This document shows positions 19,101 to 40,100 of a stretch of 64,000 nucleotides of DNA, in pieces (position 1 is the first letter of the stretch; each line of letters opens with the position of its first letter). Location of the stretch: positions 27,776,001 to 27,840,000 of the forward strand of contig OZ249438.1 in NCBI GenBank assembly GCA_965235115.1. Reading direction: 5' to 3'. This stretch comes from Laetmonice hystrix. Its lineage: Eukaryota. The notes under the pieces were generated by a model, which ran no database searches, was not told where the DNA came from, and saw only the letters and a list, made by a program, of their open reading frames with translations. Both the position numbers and the translations under genes were made by a program.

Positions 19101-22100
19101 GACTCTTTCAGAATCTGACGATCAGAATCATTGAGCTCAGTCACGATACTCTCGGCACGCTTGTTGATGTCCTTCAGAACAGCTTCATAGGTCCTTGCTC
19201 CAGCATCCAAACCCTGATCAAAGTCACCAGTAACACTCCAAGTCAATGAAAACTCAAGGCTACAACCAAATCTTTATAGAGCTCTATTGAAAAATACAGA
19301 GGATTTATACTAAGATATTATAAAAAGAACTTATGTCTCTGAAAATATTTACAAACTACATGTAATCTCATAAAATGACAACCAAAGTCCCCTATAGAAA
19401 AATACCGAAGATTTATAAAAAAAAAATGCCCACGTAAAGCAAAGCGCAACCTGGTGTTTCTTGCACTGTTCATCCAGGAAATCGAGTGGACAATCGAGCT
19501 GGAGTTCTGATGAACAACTTGTATCTGTCTCTCTCCTCCACAGTTCGAGCCGCAGGACGTCAGACTCAAACTGTTTCCTTGTGGCCACAGCATGTTCACT
19601 TCGAGACACCTGTTCATTCAGAGCAGCACTCAGTGCTTTGTATCGTCGGGATAGGTCACCGAGTGCATCCTCCAGGGGTCGCCTCTGTTCTGCTGGACAC
19701 TGGTGCAGGATTTCTTGGCCCTTTGACTCCAGATCTGTAATGGCTGGGTTGTAGTCTTTAATCTCTGCGAGGAGTGTCTGAAATGGGACGGTAAGGGTTA
19801 GCTGGGGTTTGTTATGGCAAGGTTTATTACATGGTTCAACATTTACTAGAGTCTGAAACGTAATGTGATATAATAGTTAGCAAAGTATCGTACAAAATTA
19901 CGAAATGTATAAAAAAAACATTCAAAGGTTATTATGTGTTATAAGATAATACAGGAGACTTTGAAACCGACCTTGTATTTATCAATTTGTTTTTCTATGT
20001 CACAAGCCTTGAGCCGTATGTTGGGAGCCTGCCCGACGACTTCCTCCTTCTCCCTCAACCAGGCGGTGACTCGGTCAATGTCCTGTTGGAGGGCCTCCCG
20101 GCGGGCCAAGTCCTGGGCCAGCTCTTTGTGACGGGCCTGAGCGCGGTCACCAAGCCGGTGGTGATCTTCACATAGCTCGCTTACTCTGCTCTCCACCAGG
20201 GAGCGCTCTGCCGGGCTCACGTCACGCAGCAACGAGTCCCCCTGGCGGCGGATACCGTCTAACATCGTCTGCTTGCTTTCTATGTCACGAACCAGGGCCT
20301 GTATGGGAAAACAAAGTACTGTAAGTTTCGTCTGAAAAACTCTACTGGGTGCCTCCTAGAATACGTCCCCCTCACATCAGGGAATAGGAGGCTTACTTTC
20401 AACATATTAATGCAAGTTGTGAAATTCTCAAACATACAGATGCATGGCAATGCTATCATCCACATAACTGGCCTACCGGTGACATCTGTCGCTGGACTTC
20501 CCTGTTTTATCTTGGGTTTACTTACCATTTGGAGGCTCTTGTTAAAACAAATGCTAAAAAAGACACTAGAAACACCAAGTGAATTATGTTTCTGCTACTT
20601 TGGCGAAACCAGTCGAGCTAAAATATATAGGATGTACACAACTGGAAAATTAGCCCAAACAGACAGGTAACAAAAACAGAAACCAAAACTCAATAATTTA
20701 GAATTCTTTACAACTCACACATCCCACCCCACTGAGGCACCTGAACGAGCAGGGTGTGAGGGTGAGGGGCGTTTGGTGTACCCCAAACGGTAGGGAATCC
20801 ACCTCGTCGTAACCCTCTACCTCATCATACTCATCACGATCCTGTATCACAAGTATTTCAAAAGAATAAGAAAGAACGGTCTGACTAAATCGAGTACTCT
20901 CTACAAGTAACACATTTTCAAACATCTGCATCATCTGCTATACATATCACATTGCAAAATCTGTAAAATAATGTACTGTTATGTACATGTGTACTCACGA
21001 AGTGGTCTTGAAGGGCAGTCTCAGCCTCGGCAACAGCTGCACCGGGGGCCTGACGACGACTCAAAGCTACTTCCGATTCTTTGAGCCAGGTGGTGTAGTC
21101 AGAGATCTCCTTCATGAGGGTTTCATACGTTGTAACCATCTGTTCGGACGCTTGCAACTGGTGACCCAGCGTCTGAAGGAGTTCTGCATGTTTACGCTCG
21201 ATTGAACTGAAATAAAAAAGGTAGAAGCAACATAAAAAATAAGATAATGCTTGGAAGATTATTTTTAATTCCTGGATGTATTCAAGAGGCTTTATCAAAT
21301 TTGCCAAATTTCTAAGTTAAATTTTCGTAAAAATTGACCTCTTTTTTACTCCGATCCAATCACCTGATGTGGTCACTGAGGGGGCTACCACTGACTGATG
21401 TGGTCACTGAGGGGAGACGACTGACCGATGTGGTCACTGAGGGGAGACGACTGACTGATGTGGTCACCGAGGGGAGACGACTGACTGATGTGGTCACTGA
21501 GGGGAGACCACTGACTGATGTGGTCACCGAGGGGAGACGACTGACTGATGTGGTCACCGAGGGGAGACGACTGACTGATGTGGTCACCGAGGGGAGACGA
21601 CTGACTGATGTGGTCACCGAGGGGAGACGACTGACTGATGTGGTCACCGAGGGGAGACGACTGACTGATGTGGTCACCGAGGGTAGACGACTGACTGATG
21701 TGGTCACTGAGGGGAGACGACTGACTGATGTGGTCACCGAGGGGAGACGACTGACTGATGTGGTCACTGAGGGGAGACGACTGACTGATGTGGTCACTGA
21801 GGGGAGACGACTGACTGATGTGGTTACTGAGGGGAGACGACTGACTGATGTGGTCACTGAGGGGAGACGACTGACTGATGTGGTCACTGAGGGGAGACCA
21901 CTGACTGATGTGGTCATTGAGGGAAGACGACTGACTAATGTGGTCACTGAGGGGAGACGACTGACTGATGTGGTTACTGAGGGGAGACGACTGACTGATG
22001 TGGTCACTGAGGGGAGACGACTGACTGATGTGGTCACTGAGGGGAGACCACTGACTGATGTGGTCATTGAGGGAAGACGACTGACTAATGTGGTCACTGA

Positions 22101-25100
22101 GGGGAGACGACTGACTGATGTGGTCACTGAGGGGAGACGACTGACTGATGTGGTCACTGAGGGGAGACCACTGACTGATGTGGTCACTGAGGGGAGACGA
22201 CTGACTGATGTGGTCACTGAGGGGAGACGACTGACTGATGTGGTCACCGAGGGGAGACGACTGACTGATGTGGTCACTGAGGGGAGACGACTGACTGATG
22301 TGGTCACCGAGGGGAGACCACTGACTGATGTGGTCACCGAGGGGAGACGACTGACTGATGTGGTCACTGAGGGGAGACGACTGACTGATGTGGTCACTGA
22401 GGGGAGACGACTGACTGATGTGGTCACTGAGGGGAGACGACTGACTGATGTGGTCACCGAGGGGAGACGACTGACTGATGTGGTCACCGAGGGAAGACGA
22501 CTGACTGATGTGGTCACCGAGGGGAGACGACTGACTGATGTGGTCACCGAGGGGAGACGACTGACTGATGTGGTCACCGAGGGGAGACGACTGACTGATG
22601 TGGTCACCGAGGGGAGACGACTGACTGATGTGGTCACCGAGGGGAGACGACTGACTGATGTGGTTACTGAGGGGGCTACAACTCACCTGATATGTTCGGT
22701 GACCAGCTCCTGGTCAGTCTTACTAACATCTTCACACACCTCGGCCCCGACTTCACTCAGCTCTTGAATATCTTCGCACTTCTCCGTCAATTTCTCCGAC
22801 AGGTTCTGAAATCAAACAAACGCAACAATCGAGGTGAGATCGAGATTTACAAAGTACATGATGATGTTACCCCAGTCCTCTTTCAGCTGCTGCGGGGAAA
22901 GGTCTTTCTCATGTTGTCACTAATGGCAGATTGCACACCGCGGATCCACGACTGCAGGGAAGCTGGAATGCCATACCACTGTATGACATATACATACATC
23001 TGGCAATGAATAGCGCCATGTCAACTGCAATATTTTGTATACCAGCTTGCACCTTGTTGTCGGTAGTGTATTTCGGCAAAGAATGCGAGGATACTTGGAG
23101 AAGAGTGGGGAGAAGCTTACAGAGGAATGTCTTTTTATTCATTTTCTCAACATATTCTTACATCTGCTACACTGCTGAAAACCACCTTTGTGGATGGTTC
23201 CTTTCCCTGTTAAAATTATATCCCATTCTATCCACGATATGCTATCACTTGACCGGTAAAGGCAAAGAAAGCCTGCCATCTTATTTCCCTTGTTGCTGAT
23301 CTGTATTTCTCGATGCAATCTTTACCCTACTGGCCCTGACCTTGGTAGAATCTAGTGTCCGGTTGTACTCCTCATACTGGACAGCGAGGTAGGAGGACTT
23401 TCCGCCGAGTTTGGTTTGTTTGAGAGAGAGTGCCATCCTAGTGGTTGGACTGGGAGACCGACTGGTATACGTGCATGTCTCCGTCCTCTTCTCTCGGCTC
23501 CTTCCCCCACGAGATGATGAAAGGTCTGGTTCGTTCTGGTCCAGAATAATGTCCACTTCCTTATGTCTCTGTGAGGGTTTACCAGGTCTAGATGAGGCAC
23601 TCTGACACCAGTCACGGTGGGTGGAATCGGGATGGTCATAACTCCCACAGGAATCAAGACAGTTATTGTGTGGTCTGGTGCCGGAGGGTAGGCGTTTACT
23701 TCTGCTGGATGGGACAGCCTTCGGTTCTTGTGATGGAACACTTTCACCACGTGATCTACAGAACTTTGTCTGGTTGGAGCGTCCAGGAGCTGCCCTTGAA
23801 GAGTTCGTCGTGTGTTGGCCTTTACATTCATTTTCTGTTATAGTCTTACTCCTCTGAGAACGTGTTTTATACCTTTTCCGCAGAACCCACTTTGGGTGTA
23901 CGGTATTTTCACAACGGCATACTGAATCAGTTAGCGGTGTGTCAGCAATTGTACCATTTCCCTTCCGTTCAGGGTTCAGCCACTTTGGCTGGCGGTCGAT
24001 CCAAACATTCTGTCCCACCCGGCCGCCATCAACTGAAGACACACAGCTGCCCATTATTACCCAGACAAGTAAGATAACCTCAGTCAATGAGGCCAACTTT
24101 ACCCATGTAAGCTGAGATTTATTACTATCCGTGACGCCTTCACACTGCGCACTGATCCAGGTTGTATATGACTCCTCTGTTTGACCATCCCAGACCTCAG
24201 TCAGAATCCTGGCAGACATCCATCCTGAAACCTCTGAGTTATCTTCCTGTGCCGGCCCAGTCAGACCCACAACCTGTTCAGACTGCTGCAGTACGGAGAT
24301 GTTGGAGCTGTGACCGAGTCCAGGCTGACTGTACCGGGGACTACATGCAACCTCTGGGATATGACCGGTCCTAACAGATCATCTGGTACCAAGGGGTAAG
24401 AATATCGTCCTGATCCCATGATTGCCGGCTGGGGTTGGGGGTAAATAACCGATCACTCTATGGGGTAACCAACAAATACATACCAATACCATAATTGTGG
24501 GGTTCCCAAGCTGTGATCTAGATCTCTGCTGTTTGACACTCAGTGTCCCTGGTCACGAACACCCTAACTCTAACCGATAATCTCACCCAAATTAACGTAA
24601 CTCAGGCCTTATAGCTCTATATAAGCTGGTATTATAAACCCACAGTCATCCAACTAGTAACCTCTTCTCAATTATGTTCTAGGTTTCTTTCCAACTTAAA
24701 TTTTTCAAATGGTTCCACGATTTTTAGCAAGTACATTTCCCAGCCAAATGTCCTTGAACATTATAGGTTACATTGATGTGAGCGTATGCTGGACTACCGA
24801 GTCCATCTATTCATTTACATAGTAACACAGCTTACAGTTTACACATTCTTACCTGCCTTAATCCCGTCTCCTTATCTTGATTAGTTGAAAGTTCAGGTGT
24901 TGGCATACCTTCAGCCGCCTGACACTCTACCTTCCAGTCTCCACCCTGTAAGGATTGTTCCTGGCAGATACAGCCTCTCGAGTCCATCACAACCCTGGCT
25001 CCATAAGTGGTACAACCACTACACATGGGATACTCTACAAAATGTCCATCTCTACTGACATCTGGCGGTGATACCAGGTCGTCTCCATCACAGACTCCTT

Positions 25101-28100
25101 CTCCAGTTGAGTATCCCGACACAGGTCTCTCATGTTGGCCTCTAGAGGGCAGCACTGAACAGTCATCCTGATCTCCAGGGGTCGAGATGTTGTCCCTCTC
25201 GACCTCAAAGACTCTGCCATCCTGGGAGGTTTTAATCGAGTCTATTTGATTTGTTTCTACAGACGTTTCCCTGTTTCGGTTGGTGTGTGGATTCACTGGC
25301 TGTGTCTGGTGTAGGTGTTGGTCAAGATTATGCTCTTTTAGAGGTTCCCACGTCATTCTGACGAGGACACGGCCCGCATCACCCGTCACACCCCACTGAA
25401 CAATAACCCAACCATTGACCCCAAGGTCACGGATTACCGAATCTAACGGAGTCGGCATGTTGACGTCTGCCATCCTGACGTTACGTCTGACGTCACACCA
25501 GCTGATTGAGAAGAAACTGAGTTTCTGTCGGCCTTGCTTTCCTTACCACGGAGTTACTCCCTTGGACTTGAAGGACGAAACGTGTCGAAAGTTTCGAAAA
25601 TATGGCAAGGAATCTTCCAACTTTGCAAGGCTGCAGAAACTCGTTGTTGATGAGTTTGCTTTTTTCATTAAATAGTGTTCTTATTCTTTCTTACCTGTTG
25701 CATAAACAATGGCGAAAATCGAAATTTCTCAATGTTAGGGCAAGAAAGCGAAGAACAGAAAACTAGCAACTTGTGACATCCGTGTGAGCCACCATGGTCG
25801 TCCGTAGATGGCGTCTGTTACCAGCGTCCCAGTGGTGGTCAATAAGTACAGGGCGGGGCTGCTGGTGGTAACAGGGATGTTGGAGACATGAGACTGAAGA
25901 GTTGACACCACGGAACGCCTATAAACCACACACAGCCGTGTCCCAACTAGTGAAGGTGTGATAGGAAAACATGTCCCAAGGTGATCTCTATGTCCATACA
26001 TCACATACAAGTCCGTAACGTCTGTGTCCCCCTGACTACTCTCTGCCCTTTGATGACAACTCTATGAAGGTAGAATCCCCCGGATTTATCTCCTAGTTCA
26101 CAAACCATCAAAACGCGCTGATCTCCCATGGAGGTCATCTCTAGTCGGTAATATAAAGGTGTAGTTGTAGTGACAGGGAACTGTAGAGGTCTCACAGCTG
26201 AGTGGAGCATAACCTTATCAAAGATATGACGCAGTGGGCTTCCAACTATAAAGTGCCTTATGACCCCTCACTATAAAACATCAAACTGGGGAGCTCTTTG
26301 AAATATCCGACTCGTACAGTGGTTGTCAGGCTGATTTACACAGTTACCCAGATATTGGAATCAGAAAAACCTGTCAGTAGGGGATACTGATTTATCTTTT
26401 AAACTGGGGGGGGGGGGTATTATAATACACGCGGTCCTGACCAAAGGGTCATTATTATAACCTGGATGGGAAGTCGGATAGCAATCAATAAACACGGAAT
26501 GTTTGGTATTCATGGTCCTCAGATGTCTCTCTAAGTTAGCCATCATAAAATAGTAGTTGAAATAATGACTTAAAGACTCACCAATACCTTATCTCTGTGA
26601 TTTTTTTCGCTAATGAACTTGACTCCTGTAGAATAAATCAATTAAGAGTTCCGTCTAACACTTGCAGTCGTTTTTTATAGAGAGGAAGACTGCTAAGGGA
26701 ACAGACGGGACCTGAGGTTTCCCAACCAGTAGAACTTAGTAGTATGTTTCATTTCAAGCCCGATTTCCGGCGATAAATCTACCCCAGTAATACCAAATGA
26801 AGGCGGTATAGGACAACTGGTTTTTATAGGAGGTTATAAAACACTTGAGGCTGGAATGGTGCCGATAACAAAAAGTCCGACGTATTCTGATCAATCCTGC
26901 AGACCCCAGAGCCCAATAAAATAGCACTGATCCATGTCTGACACCGAGAGGGACAGTGCCTCCCTCTGGCGACGGATCAAGTTATTACTAACAGGTGATT
27001 CCATGCTAATGGCGTCGGGCCGATACAGACTGCGGATTTTTTACTTGAGGGAGATTAACGGATAACTTAGTTTATAAATCGGAGTAGTAAGGCTTTTATG
27101 ACAGATCGATACAAAAATCCACTATTTCGTACAAAGAAGATTCACATTCTGTTGCACTGATGTTTATCCCACTCCCATGTCACAAGATCACAGAACAAGC
27201 ACATTTTTTTTCATTGTTTTTAATTTGGTAACATCTTTGATTCCCAGGCAGTATAATAAACAATAAACTGGAAAATAGACGGCAATATATGAATATAATC
27301 GCATAAAATAGAACTAAATTATTGTTTGTAAAATTGCAAATGACATCAATAAACTCATTTATACATAATACAATAACAGAACCCCTTATACCGTATAATT
27401 CCGTTTAAACACATGGTTTCTTATATTGAAGTAAATTAGGCCCATCGGAACTAAACTACACTAAACTTATACACGCTGAGGAAGTACAACCACTAATATA
27501 TTTATATAAGCATGTTGTATGGGCTGATTATGAACTAAAAGTAAACCCTACAGACACCCGGGCCTGGACGTCTAAATGGAAAATATTGTTAAGTTAAACG
27601 AAAGATCAATCTCATTTCATATCACAAATAAATGACAATAGTACTAATTATCATCACTGAAATCCCTGCATAGGACGGAATGTTTCTTGGAGTATCTCAG
27701 GAACGATTAAAATAAAACTCAAATCAGTCACTTTGTATCACAGGTAATCTCCTCGAAAAAATATCACATTGGTATTATGTTAGGAGTTAGGATCACTAAG
27801 AAGTCAGGGACGGAGTTCTTTTTGGAAAAATTATAAGACAAGTCAAATTATCCGCTTCACATACGTGTACTCCTAACAAGTAAATATCACAATTGTGTTT
27901 TCTTTATAGCTAAAATACAGGATCACTAAAATTTCAGTGAGGACGGAATCCTTCTTGTAATATTTATAAGGAGTTAAACTAAAACCAAACCATTATTCCC
28001 CAAATAAGAAACTAAAACAATCTTTAAGTCAAACACTAGAAAGATACGTGGAATGCCTACATTATTAATTCCAGCACTCTGCCCCTTCATAATGTCTAGT

Positions 28101-31100
28101 CAATCGTGGCTATTAGACAAGCTATTTCTGTTTTATATCCTACTGGGTAATATACTATAGGACTTGTTAATATCCTGCTTGACCAATATGCTGTTGCCAC
28201 TACTATTCAAATAAACAAAAAATGGACTTTTTCCATTGAGAGTGCGAAAGCATCCAATGGTTTTAAATTCATGCATTATCGGCATTCCCAGGCGTAGGAA
28301 ACAAGTCTTTGTTAAAGAAGTCTGTGAAGGCATGGTTTCCTCTTTATGAATACACAAATAGTTCGCAGGTATTTTGAACCACCATTTTTGTAGGTCGAGG
28401 CACCGACCTACAAGCATTCACTGAATGTATGTACTACAAGGCACCAATAAAGTCTATCAGCACACGTACAGTCGGTCAGGAATTCATTCTTACTGGAGAC
28501 TTCGGGACATTGTTCGCTTCGCCAGGTCATCAGATATAACCCTGTCGTTCAGAACTCACGACTGAACCTTTTTTTTAAGTCTTCCAGATATCTTCTTGAG
28601 TTTATCTGCTTGTTTTTGAGCCATGTCCAGGGAATCGTCTAAGTCCCTTGACTTTGAGTGTTTTTTCCTGGGTTTTGTGTTGGATTTGTCCTTGGTTGTG
28701 TTTTTAACTGGTGCGGTGACCACAACCCTGGGTTGGTGACCCGGAGTGGGGCCAGCCGGTATCAGGAGGACTGGGGGTCCGGGGATAGTGTTTACTGGCT
28801 GGTAACCTTGTGTACCAGGGACCGGGAACATACTTCCATTGGTGACGGAGCCGTGTCCTCCGAGAACCACCCCGGCGGCCTGGGGCAGCGAGCCGGGAGA
28901 AGGGTGGGAAACCACGGGGGGTACTGTCTGCGGGTACGGTACCGAGTGCGGGGGTACTGTCTGCGGGTACGGTACCGAGTGCGGGGGTACTGTCTGCGGG
29001 TACGGTACCGAGTGCGGGGATACTGTCTGCGGGTACGGTACCGAGTGCGGGGGTACTGTCTGCGGGTACGGTACCGAGTGCGGGGGTACTGTCTGCGGGT
29101 ACGGTACCGAGTGCAGGGGTACTGTCTGCGGGTACGGTACCGAGTGCGAGGGTACTGTCTGCGGGTACGGTACCGAGTACGGAGGCACGTCTCGGACTGG
29201 GACACTTGGAAGTCTCCTCTGGCCGGGCGAGTGTTGGTTAAAAGGATACTGATCACAGATTTCTCTGGGGTGTGAGGTGTATAATACCCCGGAGGGCGGA
29301 GTGAACGCCCGCCGCCTTGGTTCATACCGTTTGTTCCCTTCTAGCCGTCCCTTCAAGTCAATGTCAGCATCAGTGATCAGGCTCTCAATGCTATGCCGTC
29401 TCTGTAGGCGATGTGGGGATTTCTCTAACCTATCAAAGCGGACAGATGAGTCTCGAGGAGGGAGCTTTCTGACTCTTCTCCTCTCCTCCCTCCCTGGGTC
29501 CTCTCCCTTACTGGGACCCTCCTCCGCCCCTCCGTACTGGACCTTCAGGTCCCGTACCTGACGGAGCATATACTTTAGAAGGTCTTTCCTGGTTGTCGTG
29601 CCGCGCTCAGACTCGATGTCACGAGGGGGTTGACTCACTCGGCGGCTACCCTCCCGATTCTTGTGCTTCTTGTGTTTATCGGGCTTTTCCTTCTTCTTCT
29701 TTGATTGACTCCGTGATGAGGGCGCGTCTACTGGCTGGCCAATCAGAAGCAAGGATTCTGGTAGTGGAGGCTGTGAGTTGACCTTGACCGACGCTGTTGT
29801 TGGAGCAGCCTGGGCACTGATAACGTCCTCAGTTTGCCCTTGCTCAGTCTGAGTGGTCATTGCTCTCTGTGCCACCATCTGACCAAACGTCTGGGTGGAG
29901 AAGCTCCGAGCAGTTACAGTGAGAGGATCTGTGGAGGAGTCCTTGGTTTCCTTGACCACTTCACTTTGTGCTGCATGACCGCCAGCAGGTTCTCGGGGCT
30001 GACTATCGATGATCAGGCCCTCCAGTTTTTCAAGAAGGTTCGCAGTGTCTTCTTCACACGAAGGCTTGTTAGAGGCGGTTGCCTCTTGATGCGTGTTACC
30101 TGTGTTTACGGCTCCACCGGTAGGGTCTCTGAGCATGGGCATGGGCATGGCTGTAGCTCCAGTTGAGTTAGTTTGACCCGATTGTGGTGTCTGCCTTGAC
30201 ACAGCACTAGTAACACTTGCAGCTGGTCTAATAGTGGCCTCCTCAAACCCTGTGTTGTCCAAGGGCTCTCTGTCGTCCCCAGGTACAAAAGGTCCACTCC
30301 TGGTGCCATCAAAGGACTCTATGTATCTTTGATATGCTTGGATGTACGAGGGCGGCTCTGGGATGTCTCCAGTGGCGGGTAAAGCCAGGGTACCTGTGTC
30401 TGGAAGTACTCTGTCACCTAACATCGAGTCCTGCCCTGGTATTGGCATTGTCTGTAGTAAAACACTGCTTGTTCCACCTCCTCCTGTCGCAGTCAACATA
30501 TTGCTCCCTGGGTACGATGACCATGTAGTACCATTAAGTTTTATCAGGGTAGAGGCTGGGGTCTGGGGTCTGGTACCATCATCCCAAGGGGTCTGAGTGC
30601 AGGCATCCTCTGGGGTCTGAGTCGTTCTGTGCCGTGGGGTTTGAGTCGAGAAGTCCTGGCTGGACACACTGACTGAGGGAGGCTCTGGTTCCGTCAATCC
30701 AGATACCCAGGACTTGGCATCATCGCCCAGGTCGTCATATTCCTCCTCGGGTTCCTCAGTATAAAAGCCGTTTATACCTGGCTCCTCCTCTTCCTCTCCT
30801 GTCTCCTCCTCCTCGTCAGTTGAGTCTGACACCAAGTCGGTGTTTGGTTTGAGGATGTGTGTGATCTGCTCCACCTCGTGATCCACCACCTCCATGTGCC
30901 TGCGGACAGTCTGAGTGGAGATATCCGGACCCTCAATCAGCCACATGTTATCGGGGCACACGCCCCCTGGTGGCGGTGGTGAGAACTGTGGCGCCCTCGT
31001 GTGGAGATTGGTCACACCAGCGGTACAACTGATTGGTATGACAGTCACCTCATCCTCCTCGCCATCCTCCTCACTATCCCTGTGCTGAGTTTGTCCCAGT

Positions 31101-34100
31101 TCCTGTGTGTGAGGCACACCCTGGGTATCCTCCTCGTCCACCAACATCACTCTGACTGGGTAGAACTGTGTAGATACCGTGAGATCCTCCACACCCCTGG
31201 AGCCTGGGGTAGGTTGTAACGGTAGGGCAGACTCCTGCCCTGGCTGGTCCACTGCCATCAGTTCCTGCATGGCTCGATCTGCCTCCAGTACGGCCAGCAC
31301 CACGTTATCCTGAGAACTATAACTACTGGTAGCACTATCACAAACGTCCACCCTGTGCCGGTTACTCTCAGTCAACAAACGGTGGTCGTCAAAGGTCCTC
31401 TCTAGGTCACTCTCTACACGCACCAAACCTTCATCAGTCTGAGTGGATGCGACACTCACAGTCCTTCCCCTCGAGTCGGAGTCAGTTTGTAAACCAAGTT
31501 CCTCTGCCAGAACATGTTCCACACTGATGTTGATGGAGACACACTCAGTCTCACCGTACCCCGACTCCACATCACTTTCCTGTGGTTCGTCCTGGAACAC
31601 CTTCCCTCCTACCTTTGGCAGTCTCCTCCGTTTCCTGTCAGTGTCAGTTGCCGAGGATTTGGCTGATCTTGGTGATGAAGGTCCTGAGGCAGCTCCCTGG
31701 CTCACGTCAAGGTTCTGGTGATTATCTGAGTGAGGATGGATGAGTGTACGTGGTTTGGCACCACCACTACTAGGCTCAGGTAACCTTCTCTTGCCTGGTT
31801 TTGACAGATTCCTCCTTGATGACAGAGATGTTGCTGACCTGTCAGTCACTGCCGAACTCCCTGACGTCGTGTTCCCTGACCTGGGCCCAGCCCTCGATCC
31901 CCTCACAGGACTAGGTGACGGCCGTCCTTGCGCAGACCCTCGGACGGGACTCTTGGATTGTCCCCTTGTTGGCACATTAAGATCCCAGGAGGTTGGGTCA
32001 GGTTTCTGTCTGGGAGGGGCTCTCCTCACCGGTGATTGGTCCGCCGTCCGCCGGGGGATTCTACTAGCGCCACCTGGTGACACTGACCTATGTCGTACTA
32101 GAGACCCTGGAGGTGACCTTGATGTAGCTCTGCCCTGGAGTCGTGGGATCCGACTGGGACTCTGACTTAAGGTCCGCGGGTTGGACCTTCCTCCAGGAGA
32201 TTCTTGTCGGTTTCCTCCAGGAGGTCGAGCAGTCCTCCTGGACCTCTGTGAGCTGGAGCGTGGACTCCGGAGTGGTATCCGTGAGGGTGACGCTTGCCGG
32301 GACCTCCAGTCACGACCTCCTGATGACCTGATGTCGGCTCGAGCCTCGAGACCACGTCCACCGTCTGCCTCCTGGTGACTGTCAGTCCACGGCCTGCCGG
32401 CAGGTCCCTGTGTCTGTGATCGGCCTGTGTCTGAGGGCCTGCCGGTGTGTCCCTGTGTCTGGGATCGGCCTGTGTCTGAGGGCCTGCCAGTGGGTCCCTG
32501 TGTCTGTGATCGGCCTGTGTCTGAGGGCCTGCCGGTGGGTCCCTGTGTCTGTGATCGGCCTGTGTCTGAGGGCCTGCCGGTGTGTCCCTGTGTCTGTGAT
32601 CGGCCTGTGTCTGAGGGCCTGCCGGTGGGTGCCTGTGTCTGTGATCGGCCTGTGTCTGAGGGCCTGCCGAGGGAGTCCCTCAGCACACTGAGGGTAGTCT
32701 GCGTGCCAGCCTCAGAATTCCTCCCACGCTGAAATATCAAGGAGGACACTGGTTAGACAGAGCTCCCAACTTGTACAGGGACAGCAACTAAATGACATGT
32801 TCCTAACCCACAGACAATATACATGCAGCTTTCAGCTGTGGACCGGTCACAAGCTGTGAGGGTACCTTGAGTGCAACCTGTAAGAGGCTTACCACTGATC
32901 CTTGTTTATCCAAACACGTACTGACCTGCCATTTACATGTACATTCTTCCCCACAAAAGCTGTCCGGTGGAAAATGCCAATTTAAAAGCAAGTTTTAATC
33001 GCCGTGATTGCAAAACAAGGACTTCAAGCCAGCAACCAAATGACAGAGGAAGTGACATACTTTTGTAAACAACCAAGTGCCTAAATTTCTCTCACTGACT
33101 CTGAATCGAGATGTTGAATTCCGGGGTACTTTTTCTCTATGAAATTAGAAGGAACACAGTTTTTGGTTTGAAAATTCCACATTCAGTGTGACTTAAGTGA
33201 CTTCCATACTGGGAACGAGTGATTTTGTACCACTCCAAAGGCTTGCCTTCACATGTTTGTGTTATCGGTGGGTCAGGGGAGAAATCCTTCCAAATGCTAC
33301 AGAAACCAATCAAGAGATGCCACGGCCCATATCTCAATCAAGAGTTTATTGTTTTGTCATCGTACTGACTGAGGCCGACAGGAACAGATAGATAAAACTA
33401 AAATAAACGAGAGACAGTGCCATTAAGGGGTTACTCGAATCCTTGGGTGTAGAGACAAACCCACTGTCTCATGGAACATAACAAAGTCAAAGTGACTGCC
33501 GACCAGAAGTCCAACTCTGGTTACCTCCCCCCTGCTGGTTATGAATGTCTACATTTACTCCCGTCACCCAGCTGCTGGTTATGAATGTCTACATTTACTC
33601 CCGTCACCCAGCTGCTGGTTATGAATGTCTACATTTACTCCCGTCACCCAGCTGCTGGTTATGAATGTCTACATATACTCCCGTCACCCAGCTGCTGGTT
33701 ATGAATGTCTACATTTACTCCCGTCACCCAGCTGCTGGTTATGAATTTTACTCCCGTCACCCAGCCCACAGTCACTTGGGGTCAGGTTTCCTCCACCATT
33801 GTCGACCCCGGCTAACTGTCAGTTTCTGAGAGTGTGTGTTACTATGTGTATCCATATGTACTGTTACCAACGGGCCCCAAGGTGTTCGTAGAAGGGAGTT
33901 AAATTTTATAAAGTGTTCCGCGATACCTCCGTCCCGGGATCCCGGGTACCTATATCCATTGATATCATACATACATGCATGCACTCACGTGTAAGTGTTA
34001 GACGAGCGGGTTAGTTTTAACACTTAGCAATTGTTAGTCAGTTAGTGAACTACTAGGTACAAACAAGGAATATTTAGTGGACTACTAAAAGCATAAATGA

Positions 34101-37100
34101 CGGATCAGGATGGAGGGATGGGGCTGAGATACGGCTAGCAACCATCCACGTTAAAGTCCAACTACTGTACATTGTGCTGCTTGTGTCTATATTTTGGCGT
34201 GTTTAATGAAGCATTGGGCATGCTAGGCCGTGAGGGCATGGCAAGTGCTGAGTTACATTGGTTTGAAATGACTTGTTTGAATCAACCAACACTCCCTGGA
34301 TGTGTTATAAGCGGCGATTAAATCTTCATATTGCCGCTTGTTACACATTATGTGGCCGGTCTGGGGTATGAGTATATACAAGCACATGGCAATTATTGGA
34401 CAGCCGCCTCTCCCGCCCCCCGCACAATACAAAACACACAAAAGAGATTTCTCGAAGGACCATTGTTTCTTTGTAACTCCGTTACTTGTCAGAATAATGA
34501 AAGACTTCAGTTAAAATCCGAGATTGCCGTAGTCATTAACAAGGTTTTACCAGCAGTATAAACACTCCTCTCTCTCTATGAATGGGAAATATTGAATTGT
34601 TGAAAAATATCACGTCTACTTAGTAAATCCTAACGGGTAACGTTTATAACAGGATTATCTGGGATTAAAGCTTTACTGCTAACGAGATCACTAATCTGGT
34701 TAACTGATTCCTTCTTAATAATGGTGTGGACAACAACATTGGTCATTCATATGGTAGTATCTTAACATTCTTTCTGATCTAGAACTTGTGGTGGCACTAA
34801 TCGCATAAACATATTTTTGGACAACACATACATGCACAAATTAAGATAAAGCTGTCCGTGCAACTATGGGTATACCGTAAATCATATTAAAAACAATATA
34901 ATGGGAACAACTCACTTAACATGGGTTTCCACAAAAACTGTATTACCATGCTATGAGGGATTACTCAGCCAATTGTGGATTTAATAAGGAACTGAAGCAT
35001 TTCCTAAATAAACATAGGTTTCCAACAAGAATATAGTACCAAACTCTAATGGATTATTCAACAAAAATGGATGTAAAAAGGAACTAAAGCATTATTTAAA
35101 TATAAACCCACCTGTTTGTGCTTTGTTCAAGCTGAGTGATTCTCTAGTCCTTGGCTGTATGTACCCTCCATGGGGTACCAGGGTACACCCTTGGGTACTA
35201 GTACAAACTGCCAGTTATTCAGGTCTCTCCACATGGTCTCAGAAGATCTTGCTGTGAGTGGGGAAAAAGTCATCCAATCTACTCAGCCAATCAATGGTCG
35301 TGATTGGCTGCCAATCAAACAGCTCCTGACTCTGACAGGCTCTCGGCCCTATATTAGCCTCTCGTTGGGACGGTGCACACACTGAGGGGGGGGGGGGGAG
35401 TTTCGCGGGTTTCCAATGCTGTAGTCCTAGCTGGGTTGAACACAGGGTACGAGAGGGTACGAGTAGAAGCTCATCTCTACCCACACCCATTCTACACTAC
35501 ACCTACCCAAACGTGAGAGTAGTACTATACTACTCGCTTCACTTACAAGCGTCATATACAGTTCACGACCTCAATAATTCTCTGAGCATGCAAAGACAAG
35601 ACCGTAACAATGAACCCAGCGCTTTTATGGCGGCATCTCTACACAACAGTCCCTATCACTTCTATGGCATGCTATTACCATTTGAGGGTTTGGTGGTTTA
35701 TGACAGGTAGGAATATCATGAGAAGTTGGACAAGTCATCGGACCCAAATGCTTACTTCAGGTTTGGGGAATTTAATGGCGAGACACTCTGAGGCGACTCT
35801 GTCTGAACAAACTGACGGGAACCACGTACAATCGCTACTCATGGGAACCTCTACAGGCTCAGACAAGTCTGCCTCAGGCATCAACTTAGTTCCTTAACTC
35901 AGCAATAGGATTTCCCACCAACCCATGATTCTCCTTACATTCAGCTTCGTAAGCGTCGCTTTACGGCAAATCCTAGCTGAGACGGCTTTCTATACAGGCT
36001 GAGCTACATTTAACCATCGCTAAGTTTCCATTAATGTTTTTGTGCGAGGGTGAAACTGCTCAGGAATTGTTATAATAACGCTATCCATGGCGACACAGGG
36101 AACTCTCTCACAGCGGTATCATATCTGTAAGGGGTTGAGTGCGGCAGACAGACAGCTGCTACATTAACTGTTACTAATGACCACGGATGGCGACACAGGG
36201 AACTCTCTCACAGCGGTATCATATCTGTAAGGGGTTGAGCGTGGCAGAGAGACAGCTGCTACATTAACTGTTACTAATGACCACGGATGGCGACACAGGG
36301 AACTCTCTCACAGCGGTATCATATCTGTAAGGGGTTGAGCGCGGCAGAGAGACAACTGCTACATTAACTGTTACTAATGACCACGGATGGCGACACAGGG
36401 AACTCTCTCACAGCGGTATCATATCTGTAAGGGGTTGAGCGTGGCAGAGAGAGAGCTGCTACATTAACTGTTACTAATGACCACGGATGGCGACACAGGG
36501 AACTCTCTCACAGCGGTATCATATCTGTAAGGGGTTGAGCGCGGCAGAGAGAGAGCTGCTACATTAACTGTTACTAATGACCACGGATGGCGACACAGGG
36601 AACTCTCTCACAGCGGTATCATATCTGTAAGGGGTTGAGCGTGGCAGAGAGACAGCTGCTACATTAACTGTTACTAATGACCACGGATGGCGACACAGGG
36701 AACTCTCTCACAGCGGTATCATATCTGTAAGGGGTTGAGCGCGGCACAGAGACAGCTGCTACATTAACTGTTACTAATGATCACGGATGGCGACACAGGG
36801 AACTCTCTCACAGCGGTATCATATCTGTAAGGGGTTGAGCGCGGCACAGAGAGACAGCTGCTACATTAACTGTTACTAATGATCACGGATGGCGACACAG
36901 GGAACTCTCTCACAGCGGTATCATATCTGTAAGGGGTTGAGCGTGGCAGAGAGACAGCTGCTACATTAACTGTTACTAATGATCACGGATGGCGACACAG
37001 GGAACTCTCTCACAGCGGTATCATATCTGTAAGGGGTTGAGCACGGCACAGAGAGACAGCTGCTACATTAACTGTTACTAATGATCACGGATGGCGACAC

Positions 37101-40100
37101 AGGGAACTCTCTCACAGCGGTATCATATCTGTAAGGGGTTGAGCGCGGCAGAGAGACAGCTGCTACATTAACTGTTACTAATGACCACGGATGGCGACAC
37201 AGGGAACTCTCTCACAGCGGTATCATATCTGTAAGGGGTTGAGCGCGGCAGAGAGACAACTGCTACATTAACTGTTACTAATGATCACGGATGGCGACAC
37301 AGGGAACTCTCTCACAGCGGTATCATATCTGTAAGGGGTTGAGCGTGGCAGAGAGACAACTGCTACATTAACTGTTACTAATGACCAGGGATGGCGACAC
37401 AGGGAACTCTCTCACAGCGGTATCATATCTGTAAGGGGTTGAGTGCGGCAGTCAGACAACTGCTACATAAACTGTTACTAATGACCTGGGATGGCCAACA
37501 GCCAAGGTGATGGGATGGGAGTAAGGAGGACACAAGGGTAAGAAAACACGGACACCATTCTTGATACAGCACAAGACATCAGTTATCATGTCATAGGTTA
37601 GCTGACTGGTTCAGTCTTATATTCTCTTGATGTTTCAAATCTTTTTCCCTTCACTAGAAATAGTTACAACCGGAGGCTGAACATGGAATAAGTAGTTCTA
37701 ACAGCAAGTGATGTTTGCAGAATATATATCATTATCAAAATCCAAATTCTTTTTAGCTCTCGATCTGAACCATCTTGAAGAAAGATATGAGAGAAAGCTG
37801 TGAATCTAGAAAGATGTCAAGTGAAATATAAAAGCGTTATCATTAAAGTTGGGGAGGAATTACCTTAATCAACATGGGCATACTAATATATACAGAGACC
37901 AGCGGTCAGGTTCTGACCACCAGGCCTAGGACGGTCCGTGAGCAATCATCCAGATTAACAAGCAAAGCAGAATCGATGGCATCTACTCTACTGAAGGTGA
38001 CAGATACTAAACTACACTAACCCCACTTCCCGCCAGGTGGCGCGCCCAGACTACAGGGCCCGGTCAGGGTGTTATCACCACAGGTATACGGCCAGGTACC
38101 TTACACAATGGAGCACACAACCACTACCACACCCTCCATACACTAGTACCGACACCAAGTGGTCTGCACGTAGAAGGTATGGGTCAGGTCAAAGCGGGAT
38201 CACATTACTGGGTTGATCCCTACAGTATTGATGGACTGGATGCTTCACCTATGGACTGGTATTTCTATCTTCATAATATCAGGTGGTCGGAAACTCTTAG
38301 GTTGCAATAGTTATGTCTATGTGGCGTGCATTATCTCTTTAATCTAATATGGATGCAATATCCACAGGGATATCCAGTGATTGGATCTCAGTAGCTCAGT
38401 TTGGTGACTTAACTTACCTGCCACTAGGTGGCACCAAGTATAGAATAGTATCAAGGCTGGCTTACCTTGAGGCGTCCTCTCCTGTCAGAAAGCTGGAGTT
38501 CTCTGGCTGACTGCAGTTTCTCGATTTGTTTCTCGAGGTCGTCGAGCCCAGCGTCGACTTGGGCTCTCTGTCCGTGGTAGAGGCTACACTTGTTGAGAAA
38601 CTCCTTCCGTCTCTTCACTAGGTGGTCAATGTCAGCCAGCACAGTTCGCCACTGCTCCGCCAGGGGGAGCATGTGTTCTCTGACCCAGTCGGGGTTGTCC
38701 TTGGCCAGACGACCATAGCGGGAGGAGAGTTTGGACAGGACACTCTCCTTCTGACTAATGGCACCACGCAGCTCCTGCAAACAGACCGACATATCAAACA
38801 CAGCGCCAATACCAAACTAAGTCTGTTTTTTTTTTTAATCAAACCTCGTTATAAATTACTGAGCCAGTATTTGGATGCAAATGCAGATCGAAACATCCCT
38901 TGCCAGAAACTGCTCCCTGAGGGTCAGTAAAATATAGGGCCGTACCTGGAGGTGCTGGAGTTCCCGCTGAGCGGGGTCGATGTGTAGTTTGGCTGGTTTA
39001 CTGGCCAGTTGTTGGATCTCGGTTTGTCGGGCAGTCAGCCAGCCAACCAGATCTTCCTCCAATCGTTCTGCTGCCTCCCACGTCCTGATGTCCTCCTGTG
39101 TCCGTGACACGTGTCCCTCCATGGACAGGATAGCCTGAGAGAGGTTCATATTGACATCTTCGGCTTGTCTGGTGAGAGGCGAGTCGAGGTTGGTGGCCGC
39201 AGAGTCTGGGCTGCTGTCAGTACTGCCAAAGTTCTCACACTTCTGGGCGGCCGTCATGATGTCAACCCGGTACTGTACGAGTTGGTCTAACAGGGCCTGG
39301 GAAATGGCAATCATTCACGTGTCACAGTAACATGTTAATGTCAAACTACATCTTACTCCTCCTATCAAACACCAGGGGTTGTTTCAATAAGTGTGTCAGA
39401 CTGTCCAACAGGCGACGGTCAGGCTCTCGCTTGGTTGTAGGGCCTGGAACTTTTGGTCCATCACCAGTTCGACAGTCCTAAGCCATTATTGAAAGAGCCC
39501 CCTGAATATGTTCTCCGGGACTTGAAAACGTCTCGGGTATGGTACTGAATAATGACCTCATACAAATATAGGCTGACCTTGGCCTCCTGGTGGCGACCTT
39601 GAGCAGCGCTGAAGGTTTCTGGAGGAGGCTGCTCCAGTTGGCGTACCATCCAGGGCTGAGCTGTGTCCTGGAGGTGGCTCCTACAGCTCTCTAGGACGGC
39701 TTCATACTGACTCCAGCGTACTACTACCTCCGACAGACGCTCCTGGAGGTTAAAACAACATATATATAGATGTCTTCAAAGATTTAATCAATACTGACTG
39801 ACTGGTTCTACTGCTCATCCAAAGTAAACCATGTGACTGAAATCTGGTGATTATCACTAATAGTACTCAAGAATACTAGTACAGTTTCTATTGGTCCTTA
39901 TCATGGCTTTATTATGATGATGAAAGATAATCTAACTAGAAAAGGACATAAACGAACAAAACAATAATATCTGCATATTATTATCTCTTTTCTAGTGAAA
40001 AAGCATATGAACAAATTATATAAATTCTATAGAAAATTTGATAAAGGGATGAACATGAGGTAAATTTTGCCTTCTTGTAACTAAAATCTGAAAAAGCATA

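What the first reader, a model, noticed from the sequence alone, without database searches (positions are those of the whole stretch)
28556..32728. 4.2-kb disordered exon that could turn a nesprin-like rod into a microtubule-tip/LC8 scaffold
Seen: a ~1,390-codon stop-free exon in a 15.7-kb intron, in phase with exon 43. It carries three SRIP motifs in an R/S/P-rich context (32273-32284, 32144-32155, 32054-32065), six G/R/S-rich 15-aa repeats, eight TQT motifs, an acidic block, a Lys-rich patch and eight PPHSVPYPQTV repeats. Established: SxIP in basic disordered context is the EB1/EB3 plus-end-tracking signal, used by spectraplakins MACF1/Shot together with GSR repeats; TQT is the core LC8/DYNLL motif. 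Inference: including this exon gives an actin-binding nesprin a spectraplakin-like microtubule module. I am not aware of such a module in nesprins but cannot search to confirm novelty.
Basis: partly seen in the sequence, partly recalled or inferred. Interest (0 to 1): 0.88.

Follow-up and report, generated by a model that had tools for sequence, protein, structure and literature searches.

The report
Conserved disordered tail exon of nesprin
In the middle of a worm's giant nesprin gene lies a real, selected 4.2-kb coding exon for a floppy protein tail that keeps microtubule-tip (SxIP) and LC8 (TQT) docking motifs in many species, and most likely ends a shorter nesprin that lacks the nuclear-envelope anchor.

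Summary
A 1,397-codon open frame (28556-32749, minus strand) lies in the 15.7-kb intron between two spectrin-repeat exons of a giant nesprin gene. That gene has a CH-domain exon about 38 kb upstream of the window and a KASH exon about 28 kb downstream of it. All listed motifs are at the stated coordinates.

It is a genuine coding exon:
- Homologous open frames occupy the same intron in three other genomes, after the same phase-0 exon.
- A canonical phase-0 acceptor precedes the frame in seven loci.
- dN/dS is 0.10 between two tubeworm copies.

Only about 7% of residues form conserved islands. One or two SxIP motifs lie in basic Ser/Pro-rich sequence. A triple TQT (22 residues, almost invariant) and a further TQT pair are conserved. 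AlphaFold calls the rest disordered.

In every species the frame stops 0-7 codons after a conserved basic C-terminal helix, and two annotated tubeworm models (one a 7,869-aa "Nesprin-1" with a CH domain) end there. The conserved form is therefore most likely an alternative last exon giving a KASH-less CH-rod-tail protein.

EB1 and LC8 binding remain inferred; an LC8 docking prediction gave weak support only. No RNA data exist for this organism. No paper found describes the module.

The parts
38466..38801 (-). Its donor AAG|gtaagc follows 38466, in phase 0. The 5' limit given here is approximate.
   Evidence: Homologous exons also end in phase 0 in L001, L004 and L005.
32729..32748 (-). Acceptor: pyrimidine tract plus AG directly before the exon.
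   Evidence: An equivalent acceptor is present in L001, L002, L004, L005, L006 and L007.
28559..32728 (-). Giant coding exon, 1,390 codons, encoding a mostly disordered tail.
   Evidence: dN/dS is 0.10 between L005 and L007. AF2 mean pLDDT is 43.8. No Pfam hit.
32672..32704 (-). First conserved motif, TQT-x-LSVL[RQ]DS, 8 residues after the acceptor.
32408..32668 (-). Six 15-aa G/R/S-rich tandem repeats. Specific to this lineage.
   Evidence: Gapped in all homologues in alignment A1.
32273..32284 (-). SxIP motif 1 (SRIP) in basic Ser/Pro-rich context.
   Evidence: Conserved in P0001.
32144..32155 (-). SxIP motif 2 (SRIP).
   Evidence: In P0001 the Ser is replaced by Cys.
32054..32065 (-). SxIP motif 3 (SRIPR), the conserved one.
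   Evidence: R-I-P is invariant in window, P0001, P0002 and P0003. [ST]x[IL]P followed by R/K/P is found near the N-terminus in most homologues.
31778..31795 (-). Conserved basic motif GKR[KR]LP.
   Evidence: G312, K313, R314, L316 and P317 invariant
31604..31636 (-). Conserved basic motif RKRRxLPKVG, which looks like a nuclear localisation signal.
31550..31576 (-). Conserved acidic motif SD-x-ESGYG[ED].
31256..31315 (-). Conserved helix 1 (VVLAVLEADRAMQE core).
   Evidence: AF2 helix with pLDDT up to 90.
30719..30826 (-). Acidic block.
   Evidence: An acidic run is present at the same place in homologues.
30587..30712 (-). SW-x-SG-x-TEP[ED]P followed by the triple TQT, TQTPRHRTTQTPEDAxTQTP, with anchors 8 residues apart.
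   Evidence: The TQT triplets are invariant in 16 of 16 sequences. The stretch is identical apart from the variable (x) position in the Ridgeia protein. LC8 docking gave weak support.
30278..30346 (-). Conserved Y-x-x-Y-Q-x-YIESFDG-x-x-S-x-PF block, containing a short helix.
29843..29908 (-). Second conserved TQT pair: R-x-F-S-TQT-FGQ, then TQT 14 residues later.
   Evidence: F943, T945, Q946, T947, F948, G949 and Q950 invariant
29660..29704 (-). Lys-rich patch.
   Evidence: A K-rich stretch is present in homologues.
29543..29590 (-). Conserved helix 3 (DILKYML-x-QVRDLK).
29378..29407 (-). Conserved RRHS[IL]ES motif, a basophilic-kinase-type site.
   Evidence: The kinase assignment is inference.
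28922..29182 (-). Eight PYPQTV-type 11-aa repeats. This is a lineage-specific expansion of a Pro-rich region.
28559..28633 (-). Conserved basic amphipathic C-terminal helix (SL-x-x-A-x-K-x-A-x-x-[LM]K-x-[IL]-[ST]G-x-LKKK).
28554..28560 (-). Stop codon TGA (28556-28558), embedded in c|GTGAGT. This is either the true stop of a last exon or a phase-2 donor.
   Evidence: Compared across six loci.
22687..22805 (-). Next constitutive spectrin-repeat exon, which starts in phase 0.
   Evidence: Its homologue lies in L001 at 17846-17953.

Best explanation
The open frame is a conserved alternative coding exon of an annelid giant nesprin gene (CH domains, then a spectrin-repeat rod, then KASH). It is spliced in phase 0 onto the rod exon that ends at 38466. 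Most likely it is used as an alternative LAST exon: translation ends at the TGA at 28556-28558, just after a conserved basic helix. The product would be a KASH-less protein made of the actin-binding head, the proximal part of the rod, and a tail of about 1,390 residues that is intrinsically disordered.

The tail works through short linear motifs held in place by selection. Inferred roles:
- One to three SxIP motifs in basic Ser/Pro-rich sequence bind the EB1 C-terminal domain and bring the protein to growing microtubule ends.
- The invariant triple TQT and a second TQT pair bind LC8 dimers. These would zip two tails together and raise avidity for dimeric EB1.

The result would be a cytoplasmic actin-microtubule linker built like a spectraplakin, but from nesprin parts.

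Shown here: the exon is real and selected, its intron position and phase are conserved, the motifs are conserved, the tail is predicted disordered, and the stop position is conserved.
Inferred: actual splicing in this species, last-exon use, and EB1 and LC8 binding.
For: Gene context:
- Nesprin-type spectrin-repeat exons lie on both sides.
- A CH exon lies at G000:C3:27877498-27878081 and a KASH exon at 27747973-27748146, on the same strand.

Conservation:
- About 20 homologous open-frame clusters were found.
- The exon sits in the same intron in L001, L004 and L005.
- The preceding exon ends in phase 0 and the acceptor is in phase 0 in all of them.
- The window has no ATG in the first ~490 codons, so the frame needs an upstream exon to be translated.

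Selection and disorder:
- dN/dS is 0.10 over the whole exon, and 0.04-0.14 in each block of up to 200 aligned codons.
- Conserved islands cover 6.6% of residues and include the SxIP and TQT sites.
- AF2 gives mean pLDDT 43.8 with only three short helices.

Last-exon reading:
- The stop falls 0-7 codons after the conserved C-terminal helix in all six loci.
- Two of these (L004 CGT-TAA, L006 GAT-TGA) have no GT that could serve as a donor at the stop.
- Ridgeia KAK2179831.1 joins spectrin repeats to the module and ends at its stop.
- Lamellibrachia 'Nesprin-1' KAI0212904.1 has a CH domain, about 6,600 aa of rod, then the module as its C-terminal end.

LC8:
- The genome encodes canonical LC8.
- An LC8 dimer with exon residues 680-725 scored 0.36 against a best control of 0.10. 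The tool's verdict was 'weak support'. Partner pLDDT was at least 42, and the runs agreed in at least 40% of contacts.
Against: - There is no RNA evidence. No RNA run exists for this organism, and the three runs that hold the sequence are genomic DNA.
- In the window the stop is embedded in a perfect GTGAGT. Two further long single-copy open frames downstream (25501-24853 and 24285-23341) could carry phase 2 back to phase 0, so an internal-cassette use is possible here.
- Gene models are predictions and may simply end at the first long-frame stop.
- The three TQT anchors are only 8 residues apart. From what I recall of known multivalent LC8 partners, that is tighter than their spacing, so not all three could be occupied at once.
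- The LC8 score falls in the range the tool calls 'more often wrong than right unless the guess was likely beforehand'.
- PAS hexamers downstream are uninformative in AT-rich sequence.
Confidence: 0.5

Rival explanations
1. Internal cassette. The exon ends at 28560 using the phase-2 donor c|GTGAGT. It then continues through exon B (25501-24853, phase 2 to 0) and exon C (24285-23341, phase 0 to 0) into the rod exon at 22805. This would insert about 1,900 disordered residues into a nesprin that still carries KASH.
For: - The intron side of the donor is a perfect GTGAGT.
- There is a strong acceptor at 25502-25503 and a CAG|gtaaga donor at 24853, and the phases match.
- B and C are open for 236 and 365 codons and are single copy, so they are not transposon remnants.
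- G precedes the stop in 4 of 6 loci.
- The neighbouring constitutive exon ends in the same AG|GTGAGT way.
Against: - B and C have no detectable homologue in L001, L002, L004, L005 or L006.
- L001 has no long same-strand open frame between the giant exon and the next rod exon.
- L004 and L006 have no GT at the stop.
- The conserved helix directly before the stop looks like a true C-terminus.
- Both annotated models end there.
Confidence: 0.25
2. The exon is real, but its motifs serve functions other than EB1 and LC8. Candidates are S/T-Q cluster phosphorylation, proline-directed TP phosphosites (TQTP), and nuclear import through the KRKLP and RKRRKLPK motifs. The resemblance to a microtubule-tip protein would then be coincidental.
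For: - TQTP contains both TQ and TP kinase consensus sites (established knowledge).
- Conserved NLS-like basic motifs and an RRHS site exist.
- The TQT spacing of 8 residues is tight for LC8.
- LC8 docking gave weak support only.
- Three of 16 homologue sequences show no SxIP, though these are open-frame calls that may be cut at the N-terminus.
Against: - The full T-Q-T triplet is invariant at five sites in 16 sequences, which exceeds what a TQ or TP site would need.
- The middle site fits the curated LC8 pattern [^P].[KR].TQT (recalled from ELM).
- The SxIP motifs lie in the basic, Ser/Pro-rich, acid-free context that EB binding requires.
- SxIP and TQT counts exceed shuffles in nearly every homologue.
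Confidence: 0.3
3. A separate gene nested in the nesprin intron, with its own promoter and first exon somewhere in 32729-38465.
For: - Databases hold the open frame only as stand-alone calls of about 1,000-1,500 aa.
- Expression is untested.
Against: - Those calls come from a bacterial-style ORF caller run on raw contigs.
- The window frame has no ATG for about 490 codons, although conserved motifs begin at codon 9.
- The frame opens exactly at a conserved acceptor, in phase with the preceding rod exon, in four lineages.
- No conserved exon was seen in the 5.7 kb upstream.
- Two annotations join it to spectrin repeats.
Confidence: 0.07
4. Not a gene part: a chance or repeat-derived open frame.
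For: Two internal tandem repeat arrays exist.
Against: - 1,397 open codons.
- Homologues at 30-50% identity in the same intron.
- dN/dS of 0.10.
- Single copy in the genome.
Confidence: 0.01

Closest known systems
Lamellibrachia satsuma 'Nesprin-1' KAI0212904.1 (7,869 aa) and Ridgeia piscesae hypothetical protein KAK2179831.1 (2,001 aa)
   Same: These are orthologous gene models. Spectrin repeats (plus a CH domain in Lamellibrachia) are followed by the same module with the same motif order, ending at the same C-terminal helix.
   Different: They are automatic annotations with no description of the tail. The window species adds two private tandem repeat arrays and two extra SRIP motifs.
Spectraplakins (MACF1/ACF7, dystonin, Drosophila Shot)
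   Same: By analogy, the architecture is the same: actin-binding CH head, long spectrin-repeat rod, and a basic Ser/Arg-rich C-terminal tail with SxIP motifs for EB1 (established knowledge; spectraplakin review 10.1101/122010, listed).
   Different: The exon has no plakin domain, EF-hand or GAR/Gas2 microtubule-binding domain (no Pfam hit). The rod is nesprin-type. A TQT cluster is not, as far as I know, a feature of spectraplakin tails. This is not homology.
KASH-less nesprin isoforms (Drosophila Msp300-PB, -PE and -PF; mammalian KASH-less nesprin-1/2 variants)
   Same: They are made from the nesprin gene by alternative terminators. Msp300-PE is needed to build a perinuclear microtubule-organising centre together with Shot and Patronin (PMC11230431). 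Msp300 cooperates with Shot and EB1 (PMC4442817, listed).
   Different: The unique part of Msp300-PE consists of 101-108-aa tandem repeats predicted to form beta sandwiches, plus a transmembrane helix. It is unrelated in sequence to this tail. That paper describes no SxIP or TQT motif in it.
Multivalent LC8 hubs in disordered chains (ASCIZ/ATMIN, Nup159, Chica; Bim and dynein intermediate chain for the TQTP form)
   Same: Clusters of TQT anchors sit in a disordered chain. The 'S/T-TQT-P' form resembles the Bim and dynein intermediate chain sites (from memory, not tested).
   Different: The anchor spacing of 8 residues in the triple is shorter than in the known hubs I recall. Binding has not been measured.

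Membership tests
Nesprin (SYNE/Msp300/ANC-1) gene | Nesprin-type spectrin repeats | tested here: met
   Window exons hit PF00435 above its cut-off (42 and 41 bits against 29.9). They hit PF25034 Spectrin_SYNE1 just below its cut-off. The ortholog P0071 scores 222 bits on PF25034.
Nesprin (SYNE/Msp300/ANC-1) gene | C-terminal KASH domain in the same gene | tested here: met
   PF10541 scores 98 bits at G000:C3:27747973-27748146, same strand, 28 kb downstream of the window. That the two belong to one gene is inferred from strand and from rod exons continuing to the window's edge.
Nesprin (SYNE/Msp300/ANC-1) gene | N-terminal CH (actin-binding) domains | tested here: met
   The best match in the genome to the CH region of P0071 lies at C3:27877498-27878081, same strand, 38 kb upstream. 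P0071 itself hits PF00307.
SxIP-type plus-end tracking proteins (EB1 clients) | [ST]-x-[IL]-P in a disordered, basic, Ser/Pro-rich stretch free of acidic residues | tested here: met
   Three SRIP motifs sit in R/S/P-rich context. At least one is present in 13 of 16 homologues, against 0.1-0.3 expected.
SxIP-type plus-end tracking proteins (EB1 clients) | Binding to the EB homology domain and EB-dependent comet tracking | not testable with these tools
This needs a pull-down or live imaging.
LC8 (DYNLL) partners | TQT anchor in a disordered segment that can add a beta strand to the LC8 dimer groove | tested here: inconclusive
   Five TQT sites are invariant in 16 sequences and the region is disordered. 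Docking scored 0.36 against a best control of 0.10, verdict 'weak support'. That mark was reached by 51 of 78 solved complexes and 2 of 108 mismatched pairs, and scores of 0.60 or under count as weak.
Spectraplakin family | Plakin domain, EF-hands and GAR/Gas2 domain | tested here: not met
   The exon has no Pfam hit at E<=1. It works like a spectraplakin at most and is not a member.

The most novel reading that the evidence does not exclude
Annelid giant nesprin genes, and possibly those of other spiralians, use a conserved alternative last exon to make a KASH-less CH-rod-tail protein. Its tail would be dimerised by LC8 and would track microtubule plus ends through EB1. This would be a spectraplakin-like actin-microtubule linker invented independently from nesprin parts, and the first nesprin that is itself a plus-end tracking protein.
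Probability: 0.35. Interest if true: 0.75.

Novelty: new variant of a known kind. Interest (0 to 1): 0.6.

Why it matters
Nesprins are known as nuclear-envelope tethers that reach microtubules indirectly, through motors, or in flies together with Shot and EB1. A selected, conserved tail with EB1- and LC8-type motifs would give a nesprin a direct link to microtubule tips. It would also be a clear case of convergence with spectraplakins.

The finding further shows that a 1,300-residue disordered tail can be kept under dN/dS of 0.1 while only about 7% of its residues stay alignable. That makes it a useful natural set of candidate linear motifs. Several conserved islands (ESGYG, the FDG block, the three helices, the C-terminal basic helix) have no proposed partner.

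The limits are that it is so far seen only in non-model invertebrates and that there is no expression or binding data.

Tried and rejected
- **RNA evidence.** Two run searches found no RNA run for this organism. The one read-laying run showed that runs X1-X3 are genomic contigs covering the intron, with no joints.
- **Family and feature searches.** Pfam and the ESM Atlas feature search (best score 0.76, meaningless) gave nothing.
- **Giant annotated nesprins carrying the module.** The all-against-all representative search returned nothing longer than 1,880 aa. A length-matched search with the 7,869-aa model's core region found none. This negative is weak, because cluster representatives can be short open-frame calls.
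- **Literature.** No paper describes nesprin with SxIP as a feature of nesprin. No paper holds nesprin, LC8 and TQT together, or the peptide itself. The assembly accession of L002 could not be traced.
- **Downstream ORFs B and C.** No homologue was found in five related loci, even at E=10.
- **Poly(A) hexamers after the stop.** Present but uninformative in AT-rich sequence.
- **Missing DNA.** One look-up for Ridgeia timed out.
- **Cassette with the weak donor.** A phase-0-to-0 cassette using AAG|gttcag at 28568 was considered. It was set aside because that donor is poor and not conserved.
- **LC8 docking.** It passed the mark only weakly and is not used as proof.

Full report
**1. Observation**

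The minus strand carries a 1,397-codon open frame at 28556-32749. Nesprin-type spectrin-repeat exons lie on the same strand on both sides.

The splice context is as follows:
- The preceding exon ends AAG|gtaagc at 38466, in phase 0.
- A pyrimidine tract and AG end at 32729, so the exon starts at 32728 in phase 0.
- The next rod exon is 22687-22805, which gives the stated 15.7-kb intron.

SxIP and TQT are far more frequent than composition predicts. There are 3 SxIP against 0.16 expected and 8 TQT against 0.71 expected, and no shuffle out of 1,000 reached either count.

**2. The host gene**

In the whole assembly the exon is single copy. Two landmarks lie on the same strand of the same contig:
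- A CH-domain exon lies about 38 kb upstream of the window. It is the best match to the CH region of a tubeworm nesprin.
- A KASH exon lies about 28 kb downstream of the window (98 bits).

The host is therefore a complete giant nesprin of about 130 kb, and the exon sits in the middle of it. Earlier notes of this scan call the genome an annelid. I did not test that myself.

**3. Is it coding?**

Yes, on four lines of evidence.
- Protein searches found about 20 clusters of homologous open frames, 1,000-1,500 aa long and 27-50% identical.
- Where flanking DNA was available, the open frame lies in the same intron. It follows the homologue of the exon ending at 38466 and precedes the homologues of the exons at 22.8 and 21.3 kb. 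This holds in L001, L004 (upstream side only) and L005.
- That upstream exon ends in phase 0 in each of these loci. In seven loci the frame opens at a canonical acceptor a few codons before the first conserved motif, TQT-x-x-SVL.
- Between two tubeworm copies (80% amino-acid identity) dN/dS is 0.10 with dS 1.1. It stays at 0.04-0.14 in every block of up to 200 aligned codons, so the poorly alignable linkers are also under purifying selection.

The window frame has no ATG in its first ~490 codons although conserved motifs start at codon 9. It therefore has to be spliced to an upstream exon. The only phase-matched conserved candidate is the rod exon.

**4. What it encodes**

There is no Pfam domain. 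AlphaFold2, run with a 16-sequence alignment on residues 380-1100, gives mean pLDDT 43.8. Of 721 residues, 574 fall below 50. Only three short confident helices appear, at exon residues about 472-493, 794-805 and 1047-1065.

Conservation is concentrated in islands that make up 6.6% of residues. In order along the exon they are:
- TQT-x-LSVL
- one to three SxIP motifs in basic Ser/Pro-rich sequence
- GKRKLP and RKRRxLPKVG
- SD-x-ESGYG
- helix VVLAVLEADRAMQE
- an acidic run
- SW-x-SG-x-TEPEP
- the triple TQTPRHRTTQTPEDAxTQTP, with the TQT triplets invariant in 16 of 16 sequences and the 20-mer identical apart from the variable (x) position in the Ridgeia protein
- the YIESFDG block
- R-x-FSTQTFGQ plus a further TQT
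- a Lys-rich patch
- helix DILKYML-x-QVRDLK
- RRHS-x-ES
- RRLP-x-VP
- a Pro-rich region
- a basic C-terminal helix

The six G/R/S repeats and the eight PYPQTV repeats are private to this species.

**5. Internal or terminal?**

In all six loci with DNA the frame stops 0-7 codons after the conserved C-terminal helix. A phase-2 GT donor overlapping the stop is possible in four of them:
- the window (c|GTGAGT)
- L001
- L002
- L005

In L004 (CGT TAA) and L006 (GAT TGA) no such donor is possible.

Two annotated models end at this stop:
- Ridgeia KAK2179831.1 has spectrin repeats at 1-780, then the module.
- Lamellibrachia 'Nesprin-1' KAI0212904.1 has a CH domain, about 6,600 aa of rod, then the module as residues ~6640-7869.

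These are B (25501-24853) and C (24285-23341). However, they have no homologue in any related locus, and L001 has no long same-strand frame at that place.

I conclude that the conserved form is an alternative last exon giving a KASH-less CH-rod-tail protein. My estimate is about 0.6 for last-exon use in this species and about 0.25 for cassette use. The two could coexist.

**6. Mechanism (inferred)**

SxIP in a basic Ser/Pro-rich disordered context is the EB1/EB3 tip-tracking signal, and TQT is the LC8 anchor. Both statements are established knowledge.

The genome has three intronless canonical LC8 genes.

A complex prediction of an LC8 dimer with exon residues 680-725 gave these results:
- score 0.36 against a best control of 0.10
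- partner pLDDT at least 42
- at least 40% of contacts shared between runs
- tool verdict 'weak support'

In the tool's calibration the mark was reached by 51 of 78 solved complexes and 2 of 108 mismatched pairs. Passes at 0.60 or under are rated weak, so this lifts my odds only slightly.

The 8-residue spacing of the triple TQT argues against full occupancy. Sites 1 and 3, or the second pair 14 residues apart, are more plausible as simultaneous LC8 sites.

My working model is that LC8 pairs two tails, which multiplies the SxIP motifs for dimeric EB1. The CH head holds actin. Together this resembles a spectraplakin.

Other readings of the motifs remain open at about 0.3. They are S/T-Q or T-P phosphosites, and nuclear import through the basic motifs.

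**7. Comparison with known systems and novelty**

The exon is not a spectraplakin, because it has no plakin, EF-hand or GAR domain.

KASH-less nesprin isoforms made by alternative terminators are known. Drosophila Msp300-PE organises a perinuclear microtubule centre with Shot and Patronin (PMC11230431). Msp300 cooperates with Shot and EB1 (PMC4442817, listed). The unique part of Msp300-PE consists of folded tandem repeats unrelated to this tail.

No paper in the library links nesprin to SxIP as a feature of nesprin itself, or to LC8/TQT. None contains the conserved peptide.

The module does exist, uncommented, in two public tubeworm annotations. I rate it a new variant of a known kind.

The named homologues are both siboglinid annelids. 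The taxa of the other clusters are unknown, so conservation beyond annelids is not shown.

Noticed in passing
window 24835-25542 and 23284-24378 (minus strand): Two more long open frames (236 and 365 codons) lie in the same intron, downstream of the giant exon. Both are single copy in the genome, with no Pfam hit and no homologue in five related loci. Their splice sites would allow phases 2 to 0 and then 0 to 0, joining the giant exon to the rod exon at 22805. Alternatively, B starts with an ATG (about 25473) and C runs to its own stop at 23284, so they could form a small nested gene.
   Followed up: partly
window 21334-22767: A minisatellite of about 47 copies of a 30-bp unit, open in several frames on both strands (translated LTDVVTEGRR on the plus strand). 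It lies in the intron just after the rod exon at 22687-22805.
   Followed up: no
window 8314-9255 (minus strand): A 313-codon Ser/Thr-rich open frame without a Pfam hit lies among the distal rod exons. It may be a second disordered exon of the nesprin gene.
   Followed up: no
window 22687-22805 (minus strand): The constitutive rod exon after the big intron ends AG|GTGAGT in phase 2, with an in-frame TGA at intron positions +2 to +4. The giant exon's end looks the same. A stop placed in this way therefore does not by itself tell a donor from a true stop.
   Followed up: yes
G000:C18:14746101-14746352, 11747627-11747878, 11755736-11755987: Three intronless full-length LC8 (dynein light chain) genes, two of them 8 kb apart. 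A fourth, partial match lies on C1.
   Followed up: partly
This may be a tandem duplicate of the exon in that species.
   Followed up: no
L004 14555-14640: The last ~27 bases of the exon, including the stop codon, are repeated twice more in tandem after the stop. Each copy keeps a stop.
   Followed up: no
P0071 residues ~6545-6640: The Lamellibrachia 'Nesprin-1' model has a run of near-identical 10-aa units (ISCIITQK-type) between the last rod exon and the module. Ridgeia lacks it, so it is probably an intronic minisatellite annotated as coding.
   Followed up: no
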